Virus record (IMG/VR): IMGVR_UViG_3300024432_000267
Coordinates: 1-6,902 of that record
DNA: 6,902 nt
Direction: 5' to 3' (one strand)
Shown here: in pieces, positions 1 to 6,902 of the stretch
Position numbering within the stretch: the stretch's first letter is position 1
Layout: each line of letters starts with the position of its first letter
Program-made: the position numbers and the translations under genes
Notes under the pieces: model-generated
What the model saw: the letters and a program-made list of their open reading frames with translations, nothing else
Databases searched by the model: none
Told to the model about the DNA's origin: nothing

Positions 1-201
1 TTATTCACTTTTATTCTTTATAGTTAAAAATAAATAAATATTAAATGTAAATACTAAAAAAGATATTAAATTTAATATAACAAAATAAATATTATATATA
101 ATTAACCAAAATATAATATTTAAAAAATTATAATAAGATATTATACTAAATATAATTAAATATAATATTATAATAAAAGGATAATTTTTCTTTTTTATCA
201 T
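1..201 (-). CDS. Small hydrophobic membrane protein (66 aa), hypothetical
   Basis: The ATG overlaps the methyltransferase stop (TAATG). Basic N-terminus, 2-3 hydrophobic stretches and a basic tail. The DNA is only ~8% GC (16/201), so the composition is low-complexity. Confidence 0.55.
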   Translation of the reverse strand: MIKKKNYPFIIILYLIIFSIISYYNFLNIIFWLIIYNIYFVILNLISFLVFTFNIYLFLTIKNKSE

Positions 202-737
202 TATTTAACCAAAATTATTTTTATACATTGACATGGAAAGATTCTTAAAAAAGTTCTTTCATAACTATTTTGTTTTTGATAAGATTTATTTATTTTATTA
301 TATAATAATCTTAAAAATGTTTTTAATATAGGAATTTTAGATTGTTCAATTTCAAGTCTAATATATATTTTTGAAAAGAAATTTATATTTCTTTCATACG
401 CAAACTTACCTTTATCTATAAAATAATAAAATGTATTACTTGAAAATTGATTTATATGTGTTGGCTCAGCATAATTACTTCTTGAAGTAAAATGTGGTAT
501 TCTAATTCTTAATATACCATTCTTTTTTAAGATTCTGTATAATTCATTCATTAATGGAAAATAATTAATATGCTCTAAAATATCCTTACATAAAATATAA
601 TCAAAATAATTATCATTAAAAGGTAAAGGTAATTTATTTAAATTATGAATAACATTTACGCCTTTTTTAAATATTATATCTAAATTTATCCAATTCTTTC
701 TAATATCGTTTCCACAACCTAAATTAAGTTTAAGCAT
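201..737 (-). CDS. Class I SAM-dependent methyltransferase (Methyltransf_11-like, the type common in glycan-modification loci)
   Basis: 178 aa. Motif I LNLGCG, then WINLD, LPLPFNDNYFDYI, ILEHI, ELYRILKKNG and IPH...EPTH. No DPPY/NPPY or PCQ-type catalytic motif in the position expected of a DNA methyltransferase. Confidence 0.9.
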   Translation of the reverse strand: MLKLNLGCGNDIRKNWINLDIIFKKGVNVIHNLNKLPLPFNDNYFDYILCKDILEHINYFPLMNELYRILKKNGILRIRIPHFTSRSNYAEPTHINQFSSNTFYYFIDKGKFAYERNINFFSKIYIRLEIEQSKIPILKTFLRLLYNKINKSYQKQNSYERTFLRIFPCQCIKIILVK

Positions 738-1222: not shown

Positions 1223-1387
1223 TTAAGGATAAATAATTTTTATTATATAAATTAATAATTGTACTTCTCTTTCATTTAGTCTTAAACTTATCCATTTATT
1301 TATAGCTTTAAGATTAATAAATATTCTTAATCCTTTACCTTTATATTTTTCAATTTTTAATCTTTTACTTATTTTAATTGTTATCAA
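1223..1387 (-). CDS. Small basic hypothetical protein (54 aa), not in the ORF track
   Basis: The open frame fills the ATPase-to-next-gene gap: (MITIK)ISKRLKIEKYKGKGLRIFINLKAINKWISLRLNEREVQLLIYIIKIIYP*. Start is TTG at 1387 (AGGA upstream) or ATA at 1372; stop TAA at 1225-1223. Confidence 0.55.
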   Translation of the reverse strand: MITIKISKRLKIEKYKGKGLRIFINLKAINKWISLRLNEREVQLLIYIIKIIYP

Positions 1388-2087
1388 TATTAATCAATCC
1401 TTTTAGATATATATATATAAATTTTTCATAGCCAATTTCAAAACCATTTAGAAGTAAGGATGTTTTAATAGAATCATGTGTTATAACCTTTAACATAGGA
1501 TTTATAATTTTGGAAATTTCTTTAATTTTTTTTAACATTGCTTTAGGATTATCTTTTAAAATATTGAATTCTAATCTACTTCTTTTTTGCGGTTCTATGA
1601 TTTCATAAGTATCATAAAGTTTAAAATACTTTTCGGCTTTTTTATAAGGAATCATAAAACTCTTTTCTGTATTAGTATCAATATCTCTATAAAGATAATA
1701 AAAATCATCTTTTTTAAAATTAATTCTTGTTTGACATTCTATTATTATATTAGCCAAATGTCGTGCTCTTTTATCCATACTTGAAAACATTTGAGCTGTT
1801 AAATAAATGTCTAAGTGTCTTTTTCTTTTTTGATAAATAAGATAACTTGTTAATAGATTTAAAGCATTGCCAGAAGTTCTTGATTCTAACCAAGTGTATG
1901 CTTCATCTAAAAAAATATTTCCTTCTTTAAGTTTATCCATATTTAATAAATCATTTATAGTGAAAGGAATATAATTATCAAGTTCAAGTTTATAATTACT
2001 ATATATATTTTTACTAAATTTAGTACCATAAAAAAGTAATAAAAAACTTTTACCACTTCCATTATTACCTAATAAAAAGATTAACAT
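1374..2087 (-). CDS. Zot/pI-like P-loop ATPase, putative virion morphogenesis/extrusion ATPase
   Basis: 237 aa. Walker A GNNGSGKS directly after the first beta strand, then IYSNY, Walker B IFLDEA, QKRKRHLDIYLTAQ (RK...hhhTxQ), MDKRAR (DxxxR) and LYDT. These motifs and their order are typical of the Zot/pI family. No TM segment. Confidence 0.88.
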   Translation of the reverse strand: MLIFLLGNNGSGKSFLLLFYGTKFSKNIYSNYKLELDNYIPFTINDLLNMDKLKEGNIFLDEAYTWLESRTSGNALNLLTSYLIYQKRKRHLDIYLTAQMFSSMDKRARHLANIIIECQTRINFKKDDFYYLYRDIDTNTEKSFMIPYKKAEKYFKLYDTYEIIEPQKRSRLEFNILKDNPKAMLKKIKEISKIINPMLKVITHDSIKTSLLLNGFEIGYEKFIYIYLKGLINIDNN

Positions 2088-2428
2088 TATACTATTTTTG
2101 TAGTCATTTTTTCCGCGTTAGATAATCTTTCTTTTTCAAGAATAGATGATATAGCTTTAATTATCTCTATTCTACTTAACCTTTTATAACTTACCATTAA
2201 ACGCTTAAAATGTTTCATAAATGATTTTATTAAATCTGATGATTTAGTTAAACCAATGATTTTTAAATATTCTTGTATTACAACTAAACCAGCTAATTGT
2301 TTTGGTTTAAAAATATGTGTTTTTAAATCTAAATTTTTGTCGCCTTCTATTAGATTGTTTAATATTTTTTGTAAGGAAATATCTTTTGTTGGAATTACTT
2401 CATTCATATATTCTCTTAATTCTGCCAT
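2087..2428 (-). CDS. Small soluble helical protein coupled to the ATPase gene (113 aa), hypothetical
   Basis: Start reassigned to MAELREY at ATG 2428, which is 1 nt after the upstream stop and preceded by GGGTGG. The stop overlaps the ATPase start (TAATG). C-terminal motif VSYKRLSRIEIIKAI. Confidence 0.8.
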   Translation of the reverse strand: MAELREYMNEVIPTKDISLQKILNNLIEGDKNLDLKTHIFKPKQLAGLVVIQEYLKIIGLTKSSDLIKSFMKHFKRLMVSYKRLSRIEIIKAISSILEKERLSNAEKMTTKIV

Positions 2429-2429
2429 T

Positions 2430-2837
2430 TTAAGCAAAACCACCCGCAATCCAGCCAATTGCTCCGCCTAAAGCTAATCCAAATATTACATACATTAAAT
2501 TAGTTCTAAAAGCGGAATCAGTTAAATTAGTTGTTAATTGTTTTATTATATGTTTTCCTATAATCATATCAATATCATCTGGGGTTATCTTAGAACTTCC
2601 TTTCTTTTTAATAAAAGATAATTGACAATCATCTGATTTATCAATATCAATAAAAAAGAATAATTTTAAAACTTTTGAATATGTCGGATTAGTTATATTA
2701 ATAATATATGTTTTATCTCTAAAACTAATTTCTGTAGTTGTTGGTTGTATTCTTTTGCTTTTTATAACTGTATATATTTCTTTTTCCTTTATTAAGAATC
2801 TAACAATATATTTTTTCTTTAATATTTTATTTAACAT
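2430..2837 (-). CDS. Tail-anchored membrane protein with a basic soluble domain, hypothetical assembly factor
   Basis: 135 aa. Lys-rich soluble N-terminal region and a single Gly-rich C-terminal TM helix (LMYVIFGLALGGAIGWIAGGFA) with GxxxG spacing. Confidence 0.8.
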   Translation of the reverse strand: MLNKILKKKYIVRFLIKEKEIYTVIKSKRIQPTTTEISFRDKTYIINITNPTYSKVLKLFFFIDIDKSDDCQLSFIKKKGSSKITPDDIDMIIGKHIIKQLTTNLTDSAFRTNLMYVIFGLALGGAIGWIAGGFA

Positions 2838-2848
2838 TTTCTTTACTC

Positions 2849-3085
2849 TTATTTATAGATTTCTAAGCTTTTAATTATAAAAATTGATAATTGAAATAAT
2901 ATAAAAAATAATGAAAAGTATGGAATAAATGGTAAGCTAATTATTGCTATTGACATAAATCCTATTATTAATGAAAATAAAAACAAAATTAGAGTAGGAA
3001 GGAATTTTTCTATTTTCTGATATAAATATAACATTAAAATAATTAATGATAACATTATTAAAATAACAGCAAACATAAAACTCAT
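2849..3085 (-). CDS. Small 3-TM membrane protein, paralog B of a tandem pair
   Basis: 78 aa from the ATG, with 30/69 identities to paralog A by hand alignment. The frame stays open upstream to 3145, so the start could be ATT at 3139 (MPANPFPECTCEAQAIILMSF...). Confidence 0.8.
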   Translation of the reverse strand: MSFMFAVILIMLSLIILMLYLYQKIEKFLPTLILFLFSLIIGFMSIAIISLPFIPYFSLFFILFQLSIFIIKSLEIYK

Positions 3086-3145: not shown

Positions 3146-3409
3146 TCATCTCTTAAATACTTTAATTGTTTTTACTATTAAAAATAATAATTGAGTTAAG
3201 ATAAAGAATGTAGAAGTATAAGGATTAAAAGGAATATAATTTAAAGATAATGTACTTATACCTAATATAAGAGAAATTAAGAAAATAAATAAAACAAATA
3301 TCCAAATCTTTATTATTCTATATACAAATATCATAGTAATTATCAAACTAAGAAATATGACTATTATTATAATAGGTTTTAAAATATCATTCATACTTAA
3401 TAAATCCAT
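3146..3409 (-). CDS. Small 3-TM membrane protein, paralog A of a tandem pair
   Basis: 87 aa. ATG preceded by GGAGTAGGA. Aligns without gaps to the next ORF (LSLIIxM, FLxSLIxG, PFxPYxSxFFILxQL). Confidence 0.8.
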   Translation of the reverse strand: MDLLSMNDILKPIIIIVIFLSLIITMIFVYRIIKIWIFVLFIFLISLILGISTLSLNYIPFNPYTSTFFILTQLLFLIVKTIKVFKR

Positions 3410-4050: not shown

Positions 4051-6447
4051 TTAATCAAAACCACTTTTTTTATATTGTATAAATATTCCGCAACCATAAC
4101 ATAATAACATTATAAAGAATAATTCAAAAGGAATTAATAAAGCAACATAACAAATAATACTCATTAATATAAGTATAGGAATAACAATTTCCTTTTTTCT
4201 ATAAACAGAGTATATTCCTATTGTCGGAGCAATTATTATAATTAATGGAATCATAATAGCAAGTAAACTAATGATTATAAAATCAGTTTTTCCCGCGATT
4301 CCATAAAGTTTATACTGAAATTGTAATCCAGATATATAACCTTTTCCTATACAATTTGTATAATTATTATTTTCATTATCGAAAATTACAAAATAAAAAC
4401 GACTAAATTCTTTACCACGTTGTAATAATGTATTGATTGTTGTTTCATAAGTTTTTAAATAAAAGCGGTCATTTGGTGGTTGAAAATAACTCATATCTAT
4501 ATAAGCACTTCCAATAGTAGAAGATAACTCTCTACATTTAAAATTAATAATCATATAATCTGATGAAATATGCCTTATAAAATCAAAATAAAACATCATA
4601 TATTCTGATGTATCATTTTGAGTTATATCAAAATGATAATTTAATCTATTTGAATTGTCTACATAATAATAACTCTTATTGTTTAAATTATGATAATAAT
4701 ATTGAATTGTTATTACATGACTAAAAACATTATCAATATATTTGTTTAATTTAACACGTTCTATTAAAAGAGATAAAGATTTACTTAAATTAAAATTTGA
4801 TTGAATAATTAAAAATAAATAAGGTTTCTCAATTATACGCTCATCATCATGGAAATTATAGCAAAAACTATTATTATCAAATTCATTAAGTATTTCATTA
4901 GAGTATAATCCTTCTATTTTTCCAAAAGCAATTATTTTTATTGTTTGATTATAAGCATTAACCGAAAATACATTATGATGATTAAGATTCCAATTATCTA
5001 TTAATTCATAACTTAAATAACCATATTCTCTACACATAGAAATATTATATTGATATATTCCTATATAGTTTAATCTTAAATGATAATAATCTGTATTTGA
5101 AGTAGGATCATAACTAAAAAAGTCAATTCGATTTATACCTTTTAAATTACTTATTAAAGGAAAAGAATAAGTAGTAGTATAATCATCAGTTCTATACCAA
5201 GATAAATTAACATTGAAATTATATATATACAAATTAAATTCAAGAACTCTATTAGCATCAAGACCATGAATACTTACTAAATCTTGATAAGAACTTCCAT
5301 CATAATACTGTAAATCTGTATCTTGATTAGTTTGAGTATCAAATCTTAATCTTATTATTTCAGTATTATTTAAACTATAAATTTTAAAAAGAGTATAAGA
5401 ATTTATCTCATTCATATTAGTAATTTGAAATCCTAATGTAATATTAAATTTATCTTGAGTTAATCCTAATGATTGATTATATATACCCGTATCAGAACCA
5501 TCAAGACTACTATGAATAGTTATTCCATTTATGTTTTTTGTTTTGTTAGCTGTAAAATCTGGCGTATCTGGAAATACATCATAATTATATTGACTATAAC
5601 GTATCCAGAAATCTACTTCTGGAAATCCAAGTTGAGCATAAGGATTACCATTATCATTTAAATTAAATTCATATTTATCTTTTGTAAGAATATTAGAATC
5701 TACTTCTTGAATATTTGGATATTTATTATCATCAATAGTATAATTAGTTGACCAAGAATATCCAATAGCATCTAAACATAAACTATAAACTTCTGTAGAA
5801 GCAACAAGATAATCTACTCTATTAATCTCAATATCATTAGTATAAAAATTATAATTTCCTTCATTATAATTATTTATATATACATCAAAAGTATCTGTAA
5901 TACAATCAAAACTTAATTTAAGATGATACCATTGATTATTTACGGGAATTGTATCTAATATAAATGGATTAGCACCGTTATATATTCTAAATATATTAGC
6001 TACACTATTAAATATTACGCATTGAGTTGCTCCATTCATAAGTCTAATACTAATAGATTGAGATACATCGCTTATAGAAAACCATAATTCTACAATTCCC
6101 GATACTTGAGAACCTTCATAAAATATTTGTTCACATTGAGCGTCATTTGAATTTATAACACTTAGATTAAGAATAGTTTGATGTTTATTAAAATAAGATT
6201 GAACTGAAGTATTAGCGGGAGATACGCTTAAATCATTCCAACCAATAGGAAAACCAGAATCATTAATAAAACTATATGTTCCATTATAATCACCCGTAAT
6301 GATATTATTATGTCTTAAATTCATTTTAGATTTATTTACAGAATCAACAAGACTATCTTTTTCGAAGTCATAACGTAAAATATCTGATGATGTAGCATTA
6401 ACCTTAGGAATTAAAATAATTCCTATTAGAAATGAAGTAATAACCAA
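4051..6447 (-). CDS. Large membrane-anchored surface glycoprotein, putative receptor-binding adhesin/spike with LamG/concanavalin A-like beta-sandwich domains
   Basis: 798 aa from the TTG start; the true start is probably an ATT near 6483-6486. Signal peptide ends in V-N-A. The ectodomain is rich in N/Y/S/T and beta-like, with LamG-like motifs (SGIVELWF; NNQWYHLKLSFD...FDVYIN). About 19 N-x-S/T sequons counted by eye. Three C-terminal hydrophobic segments and a KK-containing tail. Confidence 0.75.
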   Translation of the reverse strand: MVITSFLIGIILIPKVNATSSDILRYDFEKDSLVDSVNKSKMNLRHNNIITGDYNGTYSFINDSGFPIGWNDLSVSPANTSVQSYFNKHQTILNLSVINSNDAQCEQIFYEGSQVSGIVELWFSISDVSQSISIRLMNGATQCVIFNSVANIFRIYNGANPFILDTIPVNNQWYHLKLSFDCITDTFDVYINNYNEGNYNFYTNDIEINRVDYLVASTEVYSLCLDAIGYSWSTNYTIDDNKYPNIQEVDSNILTKDKYEFNLNDNGNPYAQLGFPEVDFWIRYSQYNYDVFPDTPDFTANKTKNINGITIHSSLDGSDTGIYNQSLGLTQDKFNITLGFQITNMNEINSYTLFKIYSLNNTEIIRLRFDTQTNQDTDLQYYDGSSYQDLVSIHGLDANRVLEFNLYIYNFNVNLSWYRTDDYTTTYSFPLISNLKGINRIDFFSYDPTSNTDYYHLRLNYIGIYQYNISMCREYGYLSYELIDNWNLNHHNVFSVNAYNQTIKIIAFGKIEGLYSNEILNEFDNNSFCYNFHDDERIIEKPYLFLIIQSNFNLSKSLSLLIERVKLNKYIDNVFSHVITIQYYYHNLNNKSYYYVDNSNRLNYHFDITQNDTSEYMMFYFDFIRHISSDYMIINFKCRELSSTIGSAYIDMSYFQPPNDRFYLKTYETTINTLLQRGKEFSRFYFVIFDNENNNYTNCIGKGYISGLQFQYKLYGIAGKTDFIIISLLAIMIPLIIIIAPTIGIYSVYRKKEIVIPILILMSIICYVALLIPFELFFIMLLCYGCGIFIQYKKSGFD

Positions 6448-6476
6448 TAATAGAATAAATGATACACTTTTATTCT

Positions 6477-6617
6477 TTAAAATAATAATTTACACCAAAT
6501 TGATATAATTATAAATATAGAAGTTGTAATAAGACATGAAATTCCAGATAAAAGATTATTAGACATTTTAAGTAATTTCTTATCTAATTCTAATCTCTCT
6601 TGTTCATTTTCAGTCAT
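6477..6617 (-). CDS. Small membrane protein (46 aa), charged N-terminus and one C-terminal TM helix
   Basis: MTENEQERLELDKKLLKMSNNLLSGISCLITTSIFIIISIWCKLLF. The ATG at 6617 is preceded by SD-like AAGGT. The track's start at 6665 only adds a translation of the T-tract. Confidence 0.6.
   Translation of the reverse strand: MTENEQERLELDKKLLKMSNNLLSGISCLITTSIFIIISIWCKLLF
6493..6496 (-). promoter_or_regulatory. SD-like GGTG upstream of the proposed ATT start of the adhesin gene
   Basis: Minus strand TTTGGTGTAAATTATTATTTTAAAG. GGTG lies 6 nt before ATT(6486) and 9 nt before ATT(6483), both in frame with the 798-aa ORF. Confidence 0.4.
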
Positions 6618-6630
6618 AAATATTAACCTT

Positions 6631-6656
6631 AAAAATAAAAAAATAAAGAATAAAAG
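6631..6656 (-). terminator. Oligo-T tract after the capsid gene, candidate archaeal-type partial terminator
   Basis: Minus strand CTTTTATTCTTTATTTTTTTATTTTT begins ~10 nt after the capsid stop and contains a T7 run with no hairpin. This is one of the few non-coding-looking gaps in the array. Confidence 0.45.
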
Positions 6657-6665
6657 ATTAAACAT

Positions 6666-6902
6666 TCAATCGCTTATTCTTGGTAAAAAATACATGGTAA
6701 TACTGATTACTGCCAAAATTGGCAATAATACAGTAAGCAAAGTCAAAACCGCTGGATCGCATACATCCGCTAAAGTTTGATTGTCAGCATTAATAATAAC
6801 ATCACCAGCTCCAGAGATTAATCCAATCGCAAGTGGTAAAATTGTTGCGATAACAATTAGACTAATTGCGATAAGAATTACTTGCTTAACATTAGCTCCC
6901 AT
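6666..6902 (-). CDS. Putative major capsid protein, spindle-shaped-virus type (two hydrophobic helices forming a hairpin)
   Basis: 78 aa. Helix 1 VILIAISLIVIATILPLAIGLI, a polar loop with an N-Q-T sequon, helix 2 AVLTLLTVLLPILAVISITMYFL, then a short charged tail (PRISD). The length, the Pro late in helix 1 (ILP), the loop sequon and the TLLxxxxP pattern recall mature SSV1 VP1. It is the first gene of the array and is GC-rich for this window (hand count 83/237, ~35%). The ATG is at the window edge, so an upstream extension cannot be excluded. Confidence 0.72.
   Translation of the reverse strand: MGANVKQVILIAISLIVIATILPLAIGLISGAGDVIINADNQTLADVCDPAVLTLLTVLLPILAVISITMYFLPRISD

What the first reader, a model, noticed from the sequence alone, without database searches (positions are those of the whole stretch)
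1374..2837. TM-less pI-like ATPase with two coupled upstream partners: a possible split extrusion motor
Seen: the ATPase has no hydrophobic segment. It is preceded by a tail-anchored protein with a GxxxG-rich helix and by a 113-aa helical protein whose stop overlaps the ATPase start. Known: canonical inovirus pI/Zot carries its own TM anchor, and fusellovirus ATPase B251 is encoded next to the small conserved protein A154. Inference: the 113-aa protein is an A154-like adaptor and the 135-aa protein supplies the membrane anchor in trans.
Basis: partly seen in the sequence, partly recalled or inferred. Interest (0 to 1): 0.6.

Follow-up and report, generated by a model that had tools for sequence, protein, structure and literature searches.

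The report
Wyrdvirus assembly ATPase and two partners

Summary
On the minus strand, window 2837-1374 encodes three proteins. The first is a 135-aa tail-anchored protein with a GxxxG zipper helix. The second is a 113-aa all-helical protein whose TAA overlaps the ATG of the third. The third is a 237-aa Zot/pI-like P-loop ATPase with no membrane segment.

The whole window is the morphogenetic module of a wyrdvirus-like spindle-shaped archaeal virus. Its gene order matches Lokiarchaeota virus WyrdV1, with ATPase identity of 44%.

The order 135-aa, 113-aa, ATPase is kept in 12 of 13 ATPase-bearing loci. Medvedeva et al. (2021) already reported the TM-less ATPase and the conserved gene block before it, so the kind is known.

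- **A154 link:** the 113-aa family resembles fusellovirus A154 through a C-terminal motif. Family-to-family hhalign gives E 6e-4, a bridging member gives E 4e-5, and HMM top hits are reciprocal.
- **B277 link:** the 135-aa family resembles B277 weakly (hhalign E 1.4e-3) and fails the Pfam PF17623 threshold.
- **Binding:** ATPase with the 113-aa protein got only weak support (score 0.52, best control 0.03).
- **Anchor in trans:** this role was not tested.

Verdict: a new member of a known kind, of modest interest.

The parts
2430..2837 (-). Gene for the 135-aa tail-anchored membrane protein, B277-like in architecture. It has a basic N-terminus, a six-strand beta domain (aa 9-64), two short helices and a C-terminal TM helix.
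   Evidence: ORF. AlphaFold2 model with pLDDT 75. BLASTP against WyrdV1 gp25 gives 35% identity, E 2e-24. hhalign against a B277 alignment gives E 1.4e-3.
2442..2498 (-). Codons 114-132 of the 135-aa protein: the only hydrophobic segment, with the glycine zipper G120-x3-G124-x3-G128-x3-G132. It ends 3 residues before the stop.
   Evidence: Hydropathy and GxxxG count. All 17 family members have one such C-terminal segment.
2087..2428 (-). Gene for the 113-aa all-helical protein, A154-like. It starts one base after the stop of the 135-aa gene, and its stop overlaps the ATPase start codon.
   Evidence: AlphaFold2 model with pLDDT 86 and helices at 42-57, 61-77 and 81-112. BLASTP against WyrdV1 gp26 gives 56% identity, E 7e-29.
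2150..2197 (-). Codons 78-93 of the 113-aa protein: the family's most conserved motif, MVSYKRLSRIEIIKAI. S80, R83, R86 and E88 are nearly invariant. This is the stretch that aligns with the A154 motif YLVSKGGRGRRDILRVL.
   Evidence: Alignments; hhalign.
1374..2087 (-). Gene for the 237-aa soluble P-loop ATPase of the Zot/pI kind, the counterpart of fusellovirus B251.
   Evidence: Pfam Zot at 24.7 bits and PHROG morphogenesis families. 44% identity to the WyrdV1 AAA+ ATPase. Profile match to PDB 2r2a at E 1e-3. hhalign against a B251 alignment gives E 1.6e-4.
2046..2069 (-). Walker A motif GNNGSGKS (aa 7-14).
   Evidence: G7, G12 and K13 are invariant in 56 homologues.
1902..1916 (-). Walker B motif IFLDE (aa 58-62).
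   Evidence: D61 and E62 are invariant in 56 homologues.
1223..1387 (-). Small downstream ORF of 54 aa with a TTG start. It overlaps the ATPase 3' end by 14 nt and may be a fourth coupled gene.
   Evidence: An ORF of 53-58 aa sits in the same position in L003, L009, L010 and L021-L024; most of them share an alignable pattern.

Best explanation
Identity (shown). The region is the 3' end of the virion-morphogenesis operon of a wyrdvirus-like spindle-shaped virus of marine-sediment archaea, probably Asgard. It holds three tightly packed genes:
- a tail-anchored membrane protein (135 aa) whose folded beta domain should face the cytoplasm;
- a small helical protein (113 aa);
- a soluble pI/Zot-like P-loop ATPase (237 aa).

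These are the counterparts of the fusellovirus gene run B277 - A154 - B251.

Mechanism (inferred). The helical protein binds the ATPase, and the pair recognises the viral genome and brings it to the membrane. There the hydrophobic capsid protein and adhesin accumulate, and ATP hydrolysis drives loading or extrusion of DNA into the budding spindle. The tail-anchored protein probably oligomerises through its glycine zipper and provides, or marks, the membrane site. In that role it would stand in for the membrane segment that inovirus pI carries itself.
For: Whole-module synteny with WyrdV1:
- The gene order MCP, small ORF, adhesin, small membrane proteins, 135-aa, 113-aa, ATPase, with a methyltransferase further on, matches WyrdV1.
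- Pairwise similarity: MCP 54% identity, adhesin E 1e-39, 135-aa 35%, 113-aa 56%, ATPase 44%.

Conservation of the trio:
- HMMs place the three families in the same order in 12 of 13 ATPase loci.
- These include Muninn virus of Odinarchaeum (hhalign E 2e-20) and a higher-GC group (L005, E 1.6e-19).
- The gaps between the genes run from -4 to +21 nt, except in L010, where the ATPase call is truncated.
- The trio stays with the capsid and adhesin genes whatever the replication gene. Protein-primed PolB is present in L003, L009, L010 and L024. Medvedeva et al. report rolling-circle Rep in other wyrdviruses.

Link to fuselloviruses:
- All 9 fusellovirus regions show B277 - A154 - B251.
- 113-aa family against A154: hhalign E 6e-4; bridging member E 4e-5, probability 70%.
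- The 113-aa HMM ranks all A154 orthologues first among 523 fusellovirus ORFs, at E 0.002-0.025; the next hit is at 0.56 and the best reversed decoy at 0.056.
- The A154 HMM's best hit among 474 ORFs from wyrdvirus-like loci is a 113-aa family member, at E 1.4e-4.
- 135-aa family against B277: hhalign E 1.4e-3 over 73 columns. B277 orthologues fill the first 8 HMM ranks. Both ESM Atlas leads point to PF17623.

Functional hint from the literature: the satellite pSSVx carries only the tandem A154/B251 homologues and is packaged by helper SSVs. These two are described as putative DNA packaging components (PMC1635272; PMC9608457).

Binding test, ATPase plus the 113-aa protein: weak support.
- Score 0.52, best of 3 controls 0.03.
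- The mark was reached by 58 of 80 solved complexes and 2 of 110 mismatched pairs.
- At 0.60 or under it was reached by only 7 of those 80, and by both mismatches that passed.
- The runs agree in at least 89% of contacts; the partner's pLDDT is at least 53.
Against: - No experiment exists for any wyrdvirus protein.
- The complex prediction is only 'weak support', and the tool gave no interface.
- Binding of the 135-aa protein to either partner was not tested.
- The A154 similarity rests statistically on a motif of about 35-52 residues. Global and relaxed hhalign runs added nothing.
- None of 17 members of the 135-aa family reaches Pfam B277 (best E 7). Part of the profile similarity may come from the glycine-rich TM helix.
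- In small viral genomes nearly all genes abut, so close spacing alone is weak evidence of a shared complex. The whole block is syntenic, not only these three genes.
- pSSVx lacks a B277 homologue, so the membrane protein is not needed in cis.
- Neither partner has a solved structural relative that would suggest a function.
Confidence: 0.5

Rival explanations
1. The ATPase and the 113-aa protein work together as a genome-recognition and packaging pair. The 135-aa tail-anchored protein does an independent job, such as an envelope or virion component or a budding-site factor, and is not an anchor for the ATPase.
For: pSSVx carries the A154/B251 tandem without B277 and is still packaged. B277 is present in just over 90% of fusellovirus genomes, while A154 and B251 are in all of them (PMC9608457). 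The genes before the 135-aa gene also encode small membrane proteins, so it may belong with them. Only the ATPase/113-aa pair was put to a binding test.
Against: The 135-aa gene is contiguous with the 113-aa gene, with gaps of -4 to +21 nt, in 11 of 13 loci, across ATPase divergence down to about 30% identity. Tail-anchored topology puts its folded domain in the cytoplasm, where the ATPase is.
Confidence: 0.25
2. The trio is a membrane-attached replication-initiation complex. The ATPase would act as a DnaA-like initiator, and the two small proteins would be parts of a replication factory.
For: B251 and His1 ORF16 are annotated as DnaA-like replication initiation proteins in RefSeq. The SSV10 study labels all T9 ORFs, including the B277, A154 and B251 homologues, as 'replication complex' or 'replication initiation' (PMC6080066).
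Against: The window ATPase matches Zot/pI morphogenesis families, and DnaA is not among its Pfam or PHROG hits. The trio sits inside the capsid and adhesin block. It is kept in relatives that have their own unrelated replication proteins, either PolB or, per Medvedeva et al., rolling-circle Rep.
Confidence: 0.12
3. The adjacency has no functional meaning. It would be three unrelated genes packed together by genome compaction.
For: Most genes in the window abut or overlap.
Against: The same order holds in 12 of 13 loci, including groups as distant as Muninn virus and L005, and probably in fuselloviruses too.
Confidence: 0.03

Closest known systems
Wyrdviridae morphogenetic module (Lokiarchaeota virus WyrdV1, MZ666939, gp25-gp26-gp27; Medvedeva et al.)
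   Same: The gene order is the same across the whole window. All three proteins are clearly homologous (35%, 56% and 44% identity). The ATPase has no TM segment, as already noted in that paper.
   Different: GC content is much lower (14-26%). [quoted passage not shown] The source contig is 8.76 kb and incomplete, and is not among the named wyrdviruses.
Fusellovirus T9 genes B277 - A154 - B251 (SSV1 and relatives), and the pSSVx tandem ORF154-ORF288
   Same: The order is the same: a single-pass glycine-zipper membrane protein, then a small soluble protein, then a TM-less P-loop ATPase, with the small gene abutting or overlapping the ATPase start. There is remote profile similarity for all three.
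   Different: B277 is twice as long. It has an N-terminal coiled-coil region of about 100 residues and a Thr/Ser-rich tail of 30-47 residues after the TM helix, so it is not tail-anchored. A154 has an extra N-terminal coiled coil and an acidic linker. Sequence similarity is marginal, and the 135-aa family fails Pfam PF17623.
Inovirus pI / Zot assembly ATPase (Pfam PF05707; PDB 2r2a)
   Same: The P-loop ATPase domain is the same and scores above the Pfam gathering threshold. Medvedeva et al. infer a non-lytic, extrusion-like release for wyrdviruses.
   Different: pI carries its own TM helix and a periplasmic domain (established knowledge, also stated). Here the ATPase is soluble and ends in a helical C-terminal region of about 75 residues. 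The partner genes are unrelated to pXI or pIV.
His1 (Halspiviridae) ORF20-ORF18-ORF16
   Same: An ATPase (ORF16) is preceded by a 145-aa ORF18. ORF18 is the only His1 ORF hit by the 113-aa family HMM (E 0.024 among 186 ORFs). Further upstream is a 137-aa protein with a C-terminal anchor (ORF20).
   Different: The hits are not significant. Extra small ORFs lie between the genes. ORF16 has a C-terminal winged-helix domain.

Membership tests
Wyrdvirus-like spindle-shaped viruses (morphogenetic module) | His1-like major capsid protein of about 80 aa with two hydrophobic segments | tested here: met
   Window 6902-6666 encodes 78 aa with 54% identity to the WyrdV1 MCP, E 2e-23.
Wyrdvirus-like spindle-shaped viruses (morphogenetic module) | Large adhesin followed by a conserved block of small genes and then the ATPase | tested here: met
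   Adhesin against WyrdV1 gp21 gives E 1e-39. The same order is seen in L001, L003, L009, L010 and L021-L024.
Wyrdvirus-like spindle-shaped viruses (morphogenetic module) | Asgard archaeal host | not testable with these tools
   Only indirect evidence. The nearest named relatives infect Loki- and Odinarchaea. One ATPase homologue comes from a Promethearchaeota MAG. The DNA is found in subsurface, cold-seep and marine-sediment metagenomes. No CRISPR spacer match was attempted.
Pfam PF05707 Zot / inovirus pI | P-loop ATPase domain scoring above the gathering threshold | tested here: met
   24.7 bits against a cut-off of 20.3, residues 51-160. PHROG families for M13 protein I morphogenesis and Zot-like toxin also match.
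Pfam PF05707 Zot / inovirus pI | Own transmembrane helix after the ATPase domain | tested here: not met
   Highest hydropathy is 1.26, at the P-loop. No homologue has a TM-like segment outside the P-loop.
Fusellovirus A154 family | Sequence similarity to A154 orthologues | tested here: inconclusive
   hhalign gives E 6e-4 at 29% probability over 35 columns. The bridging member L023 gives E 4e-5 at 70% probability. HMM top hits are reciprocal. Nothing was gained by global alignment, and no Pfam model exists for A154.
Fusellovirus A154 family | Gene lies immediately before the B251-type ATPase and abuts or overlaps it | tested here: met
   Window TAATG overlap. SSV1 A154 ends 32 nt inside B251. 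The same position is seen in 8 other fuselloviruses.
Pfam PF17623 B277 | Match to the Pfam model above its threshold (27 bits) | tested here: not met
   None of the 17 members matches; the best is E 7. SSV4 ORF280 scores 448.8 bits as a positive control.
Pfam PF17623 B277 | Single glycine-zipper TM helix near the C-terminus, preceded by a soluble domain; gene lies two places before the ATPase | tested here: met
   Profile-profile comparison gives E 1.4e-3 over 73 columns. The ESM Atlas leads are 0.76 by features and TM 0.40 by structure. These show likeness, not membership.

The most novel reading that the evidence does not exclude
The run of membrane protein, small helical protein and soluble ATPase is an ancestral three-part genome-delivery machine shared by all spindle-shaped archaeal viruses: fusello-, wyrd-, Muninn-like and perhaps halspiviruses. 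It would work as an inovirus pI split into separate polypeptides. The large, unannotated 113-aa family (576 clusters at 50% identity) would be the piece that couples genome recognition to the ATPase.
Probability: 0.3. Interest if true: 0.6.

Novelty: new member of a known kind. Interest (0 to 1): 0.3.

Why it matters
How spindle-shaped viruses load DNA and leave the cell without lysis is still unknown, and no partner of their signature ATPase has been characterised. This window adds no new kind of system. It does help define a compact candidate set for experiments: three small proteins conserved from Sulfolobus viruses to Asgard viruses. It also gives a probable name, A154-like, to a widespread family of small proteins that databases leave blank.

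Tried and rejected
- Searching viral contigs with the single ATPase protein found nothing. An alignment was needed.
- The narrow 51-sequence profile of the 113-aa family against A154 was not significant (E 0.11). Only the 150-sequence profile and the L023 member gave signal.
- Relaxed and global hhalign runs did not extend the A154 similarity.
- Foldseek of the 113-aa model against the PDB gave no match at E <= 0.001. In BFVD the only notable hit was AMDV2_15 of an acid-mine-drainage virus (E 6.5e-3, TM 0.58).
- The 135-aa model had no structural relative: VIA-align best Z 2.8 and BFVD best E 0.18.
- Pfam and PHROGs gave nothing for either partner.
- The ORFs directly before the ATPase in L006 and L007 are not family members. 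L006 has distant, longer versions further upstream. L007 has none.
- The B251 HMM does not pick out wyrdvirus ATPases by plain HMM search. Only the profile-profile comparison links them.
- No RNA run holds the stretch, so read laying was not used and expression is unknown.
Full report
**What is in the window.** The window is 6902 nt with 14-26% GC. All substantial ORFs lie on the minus strand. The 'genome' held for it is the window itself. The same DNA is part of an 8760-nt JGI metagenome contig, Ga0209977_10002196. Read 5' to 3' on the minus strand, the genes are:
- a 78-aa hydrophobic hairpin protein;
- a 62-aa ORF;
- a 798-aa protein with a C-terminal membrane region;
- four small membrane proteins of 74, 136, 87 and 78 aa;
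- the three genes of the finding;
- ORFs of 54, 100 and 55 aa;
- a methyltransferase;
- a 66-aa ORF.

**Check of the observation.**
- ATPase: 2087-1374, 237 aa, with Walker A GNNGSGKS and Walker B IFLDE. It matches Pfam Zot above threshold (24.7 against 20.3 bits) and PHROG families annotated as head morphogenesis, M13 protein I morphogenesis and Zot-like toxin. A profile of the family finds PDB entry 2r2a at E 1e-3.
- No membrane segment in the ATPase: the highest 19-residue hydropathy mean is 1.26, at the P-loop strand. The few homologues above 1.6 reach it only in that same stretch.
- 113-aa gene: it starts at the ATG at 2428, one base after the TAA of the 135-aa gene. It ends in TAA at 2089-2087, sharing base 2087 with the ATPase ATG.
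- 113-aa fold: AlphaFold2 with 150 sequences gives an all-helical model with pLDDT 86.
- 135-aa protein: one hydrophobic helix at residues 114-132, with glycines at 120, 124, 128 and 132, three residues from the end, and a strongly basic N-terminus.
- 135-aa fold: the model (pLDDT 75) shows a six-strand beta domain at residues 9-64, two short helices and the TM helix.

**What it is.** A tblastn search of phage records with the ATPase finds Lokiarchaeota virus WyrdV1 (44% identity, E 2e-58) and Muninn virus of Odinarchaeum (32%). Three inovirus-type records follow far behind.

WyrdV1 has the same gene order across the whole module. Similarity to WyrdV1 is:
- capsid protein: 54% identical;
- adhesin: E 1e-39;
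- 135-aa protein against gp25: 35%;
- 113-aa protein against gp26: 56%.

The window is therefore the morphogenetic module of a wyrdvirus-like spindle-shaped virus. Near-identical DNA is held by subsurface, cold-seep and marine-sediment metagenomes. No RNA run holds it.

**Co-occurrence.** I collected 13 loci that carry a homologous ATPase, from three sources: IMG/VR, contigs encoding homologues, and the two named viruses. HMMs of the three families find them in the order 135-aa, 113-aa, ATPase in 12 of the 13.
- In 11 loci the three genes are contiguous, with gaps between -4 and +21 nt, apart from one truncated ATPase call.
- In L006 the matches are distant and two other ORFs intervene. L007 has neither partner.
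- The conserved set reaches Muninn virus (hhalign E 2e-20) and a higher-GC group (L005, E 1.6e-19), where the ATPase is only about 30% identical.
- The 113-aa family is large: 576 representatives of 50%-identity clusters at E <= 1e-3, nearly all 100-135 aa. None of them has a Pfam domain, and the only names on record are generic ones.

**What was already known.** Medvedeva et al. (bioRxiv 10.1101/2021.07.29.453957) made three statements about wyrdviruses:
- the ATPase is most similar to pI of filamentous phages;
It leaves gp26 as hypothetical. The core observation is thus published for the family, and this window is a further member.

**Test of the A154 idea.** In SSV1, A154 runs from 15223 across the origin to 222 and overlaps the start of B251 at 191. 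Eight other fuselloviruses show B277, A154 and B251 in a row.
- The 150-sequence profile of the 113-aa family against an A154 alignment gives hhalign E 6e-4 at 29% probability. This covers 35 columns over the family's most conserved motif, YMVSxxRxSRxEII against YLVSKGGRGRRDIL.
- A narrower profile had given only E 0.11.
- Among 523 stop-to-stop ORFs from nine fusellovirus regions, the ten best HMM hits are all A154 (E 0.002-0.025). The next hit is at 0.56, and the best reversed decoy at 0.056.
- In reverse, the A154 HMM's best hit among 474 ORFs from wyrdvirus-like loci is a family member from L023, at E 1.4e-4.
- That member aligns to A154 with 33% identity over 52 columns, E 4e-5, probability 70%.
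- Global or relaxed alignment adds nothing.

I judge homology of the C-terminal domain likely, at about three in four, but not settled.

**Test of the B277 idea.**
- The 135-aa family against a B277 alignment gives hhalign E 1.4e-3 at 17.5% probability, over 73 columns that include the region before the TM helix.
- B277 orthologues fill the first eight HMM ranks.
- The B277 HMM's two best hits in wyrdvirus-like loci are gp25 of WyrdV1 and its Muninn counterpart.
- Both ESM Atlas leads point to PF17623.
- No member reaches the Pfam model, though. B277 also differs in having a long N-terminal coiled coil and an external Thr/Ser tail.

I therefore call the 135-aa protein B277-like in architecture and position. 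Homology is plausible but unproven, and it is not a Pfam member.

**ATPase against B251.** hhalign gives E 1.6e-4 at 51% probability, over 115 columns that span both Walker motifs.

**Binding.** The verdict was weak support.
- Score 0.52 (runs 0.43, 0.52 and 0.55), against 0.03 for the best of three controls.
- The mark was reached by 58 of 80 solved complexes and 2 of 110 mismatched pairs.
- At 0.60 or under it was reached by only 7 of those 80, and by both mismatches that passed.
- The runs agree in at least 89% of contacts; the partner's pLDDT is at least 53.
- No interface was reported.

The tool says such a pass is more often wrong than right unless the guess was likely beforehand. Here the prior was fair, given the start/stop overlap, the conserved adjacency, and the pSSVx tandem of A154 and B251 homologues described as putative packaging components (PMC1635272; PMC9608457). 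The result raises my odds a little. Nothing was tested for the 135-aa protein.

**Mechanism.**
- Shown: the identity of the genes, their conservation as a set, the soluble nature of the ATPase, and the tail-anchored topology of the 135-aa protein.
- Inferred: that the helical protein and the ATPase form a pair that selects the genome and brings it to the membrane assembly site, and that the tail-anchored protein oligomerises and supplies or marks that site.

That pSSVx carries the pair without a B277 homologue fits a division of labour: a genome-specific pair and a generic membrane platform. It equally fits the rival in which the membrane protein works independently.

The replication-complex reading used in some fusellovirus papers (PMC6080066) is less likely here. 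The trio stays with the capsid and adhesin genes while the replication genes differ between relatives. The ATPase also matches morphogenesis families, and DnaA is not among its hits.

**Verdict.** The system is a new member of a known kind. The modest new content is the probable A154 identity of the gene before the ATPase, and with it the suggestion that B277 - A154 - ATPase is a cassette shared across families of spindle-shaped viruses.

Noticed in passing
window 1223-1387 (-): A 54-aa ORF with a TTG start overlaps the ATPase 3' end by 14 nt. An ORF of 53-58 aa sits in the same position after the ATPase in L003, L009, L010 and L021-L024; most of them share an alignable pattern (KI..K.lKI..y...giKif). 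It may be a fourth coupled gene.
   Followed up: partly
window 3146-3409 and 2849-3085 (-): The 87-aa and 78-aa membrane proteins are paralogues (39% identity over 59 residues, E 4e-11). WyrdV1 has a single 100-aa gene at this place. L024 also has two.
   Followed up: partly
window 201-737 (-): This is a class I methyltransferase fragment-like protein of 178 aa, matching only the C-terminal part of Methyltransf_11. A methyltransferase follows the ATPase in relatives too, but from different Pfam families: O-methyltransferase in WyrdV1, Methyltransf_24 in L021 and DUF268 in L022.
   Followed up: no
L008 (JGI Ga0209977_10002196, 8760 nt); window = L008 1358-8259 reversed: The source contig extends about 1.36 kb beyond the capsid gene and 0.5 kb beyond the other end. 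No replication gene is visible, so the genome is incomplete.
   Followed up: partly
L006 6803-8085 (+): This distant relative has enlarged versions of both partners: a 181-aa protein with two TM segments (E 2e-4) and a 246-aa protein (E 1e-5). A Zn-finger ORF and a 111-aa ORF lie between them and the ATPase.
   Followed up: no
L025 (His1) 6242-6679 (-) and 6808-7221 (-): His1 ORF18, two genes before the ATPase ORF16, is the only His1 ORF hit by the 113-aa family HMM (E 0.024). ORF20, a 137-aa protein with a C-terminal anchor, is the second BFVD hit of the 135-aa model (E 0.5, not significant).
   Followed up: partly
113-aa model (window 2087-2428): The best viral structural match is AMDV2_15 from an acid-mine-drainage virus (E 6.5e-3, TM 0.58, 105 columns). 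This hints that the family reaches viruses of other archaeal lineages.
   Followed up: no
L012 (SSV1 NC_001338) 15223-15465: RefSeq lists A154 as a partial 'DNA gyrase-like protein' cut by the record's origin. Read across the origin, the full ORF is 154 aa and ends 32 nt inside B251.
   Followed up: yes
window 1-500: GC content falls to 14% at the 3' end of the module. Short AT-rich direct and inverted repeats cluster at 57-185. This may be a regulatory or intergenic region that overlaps the 66-aa ORF.
   Followed up: no
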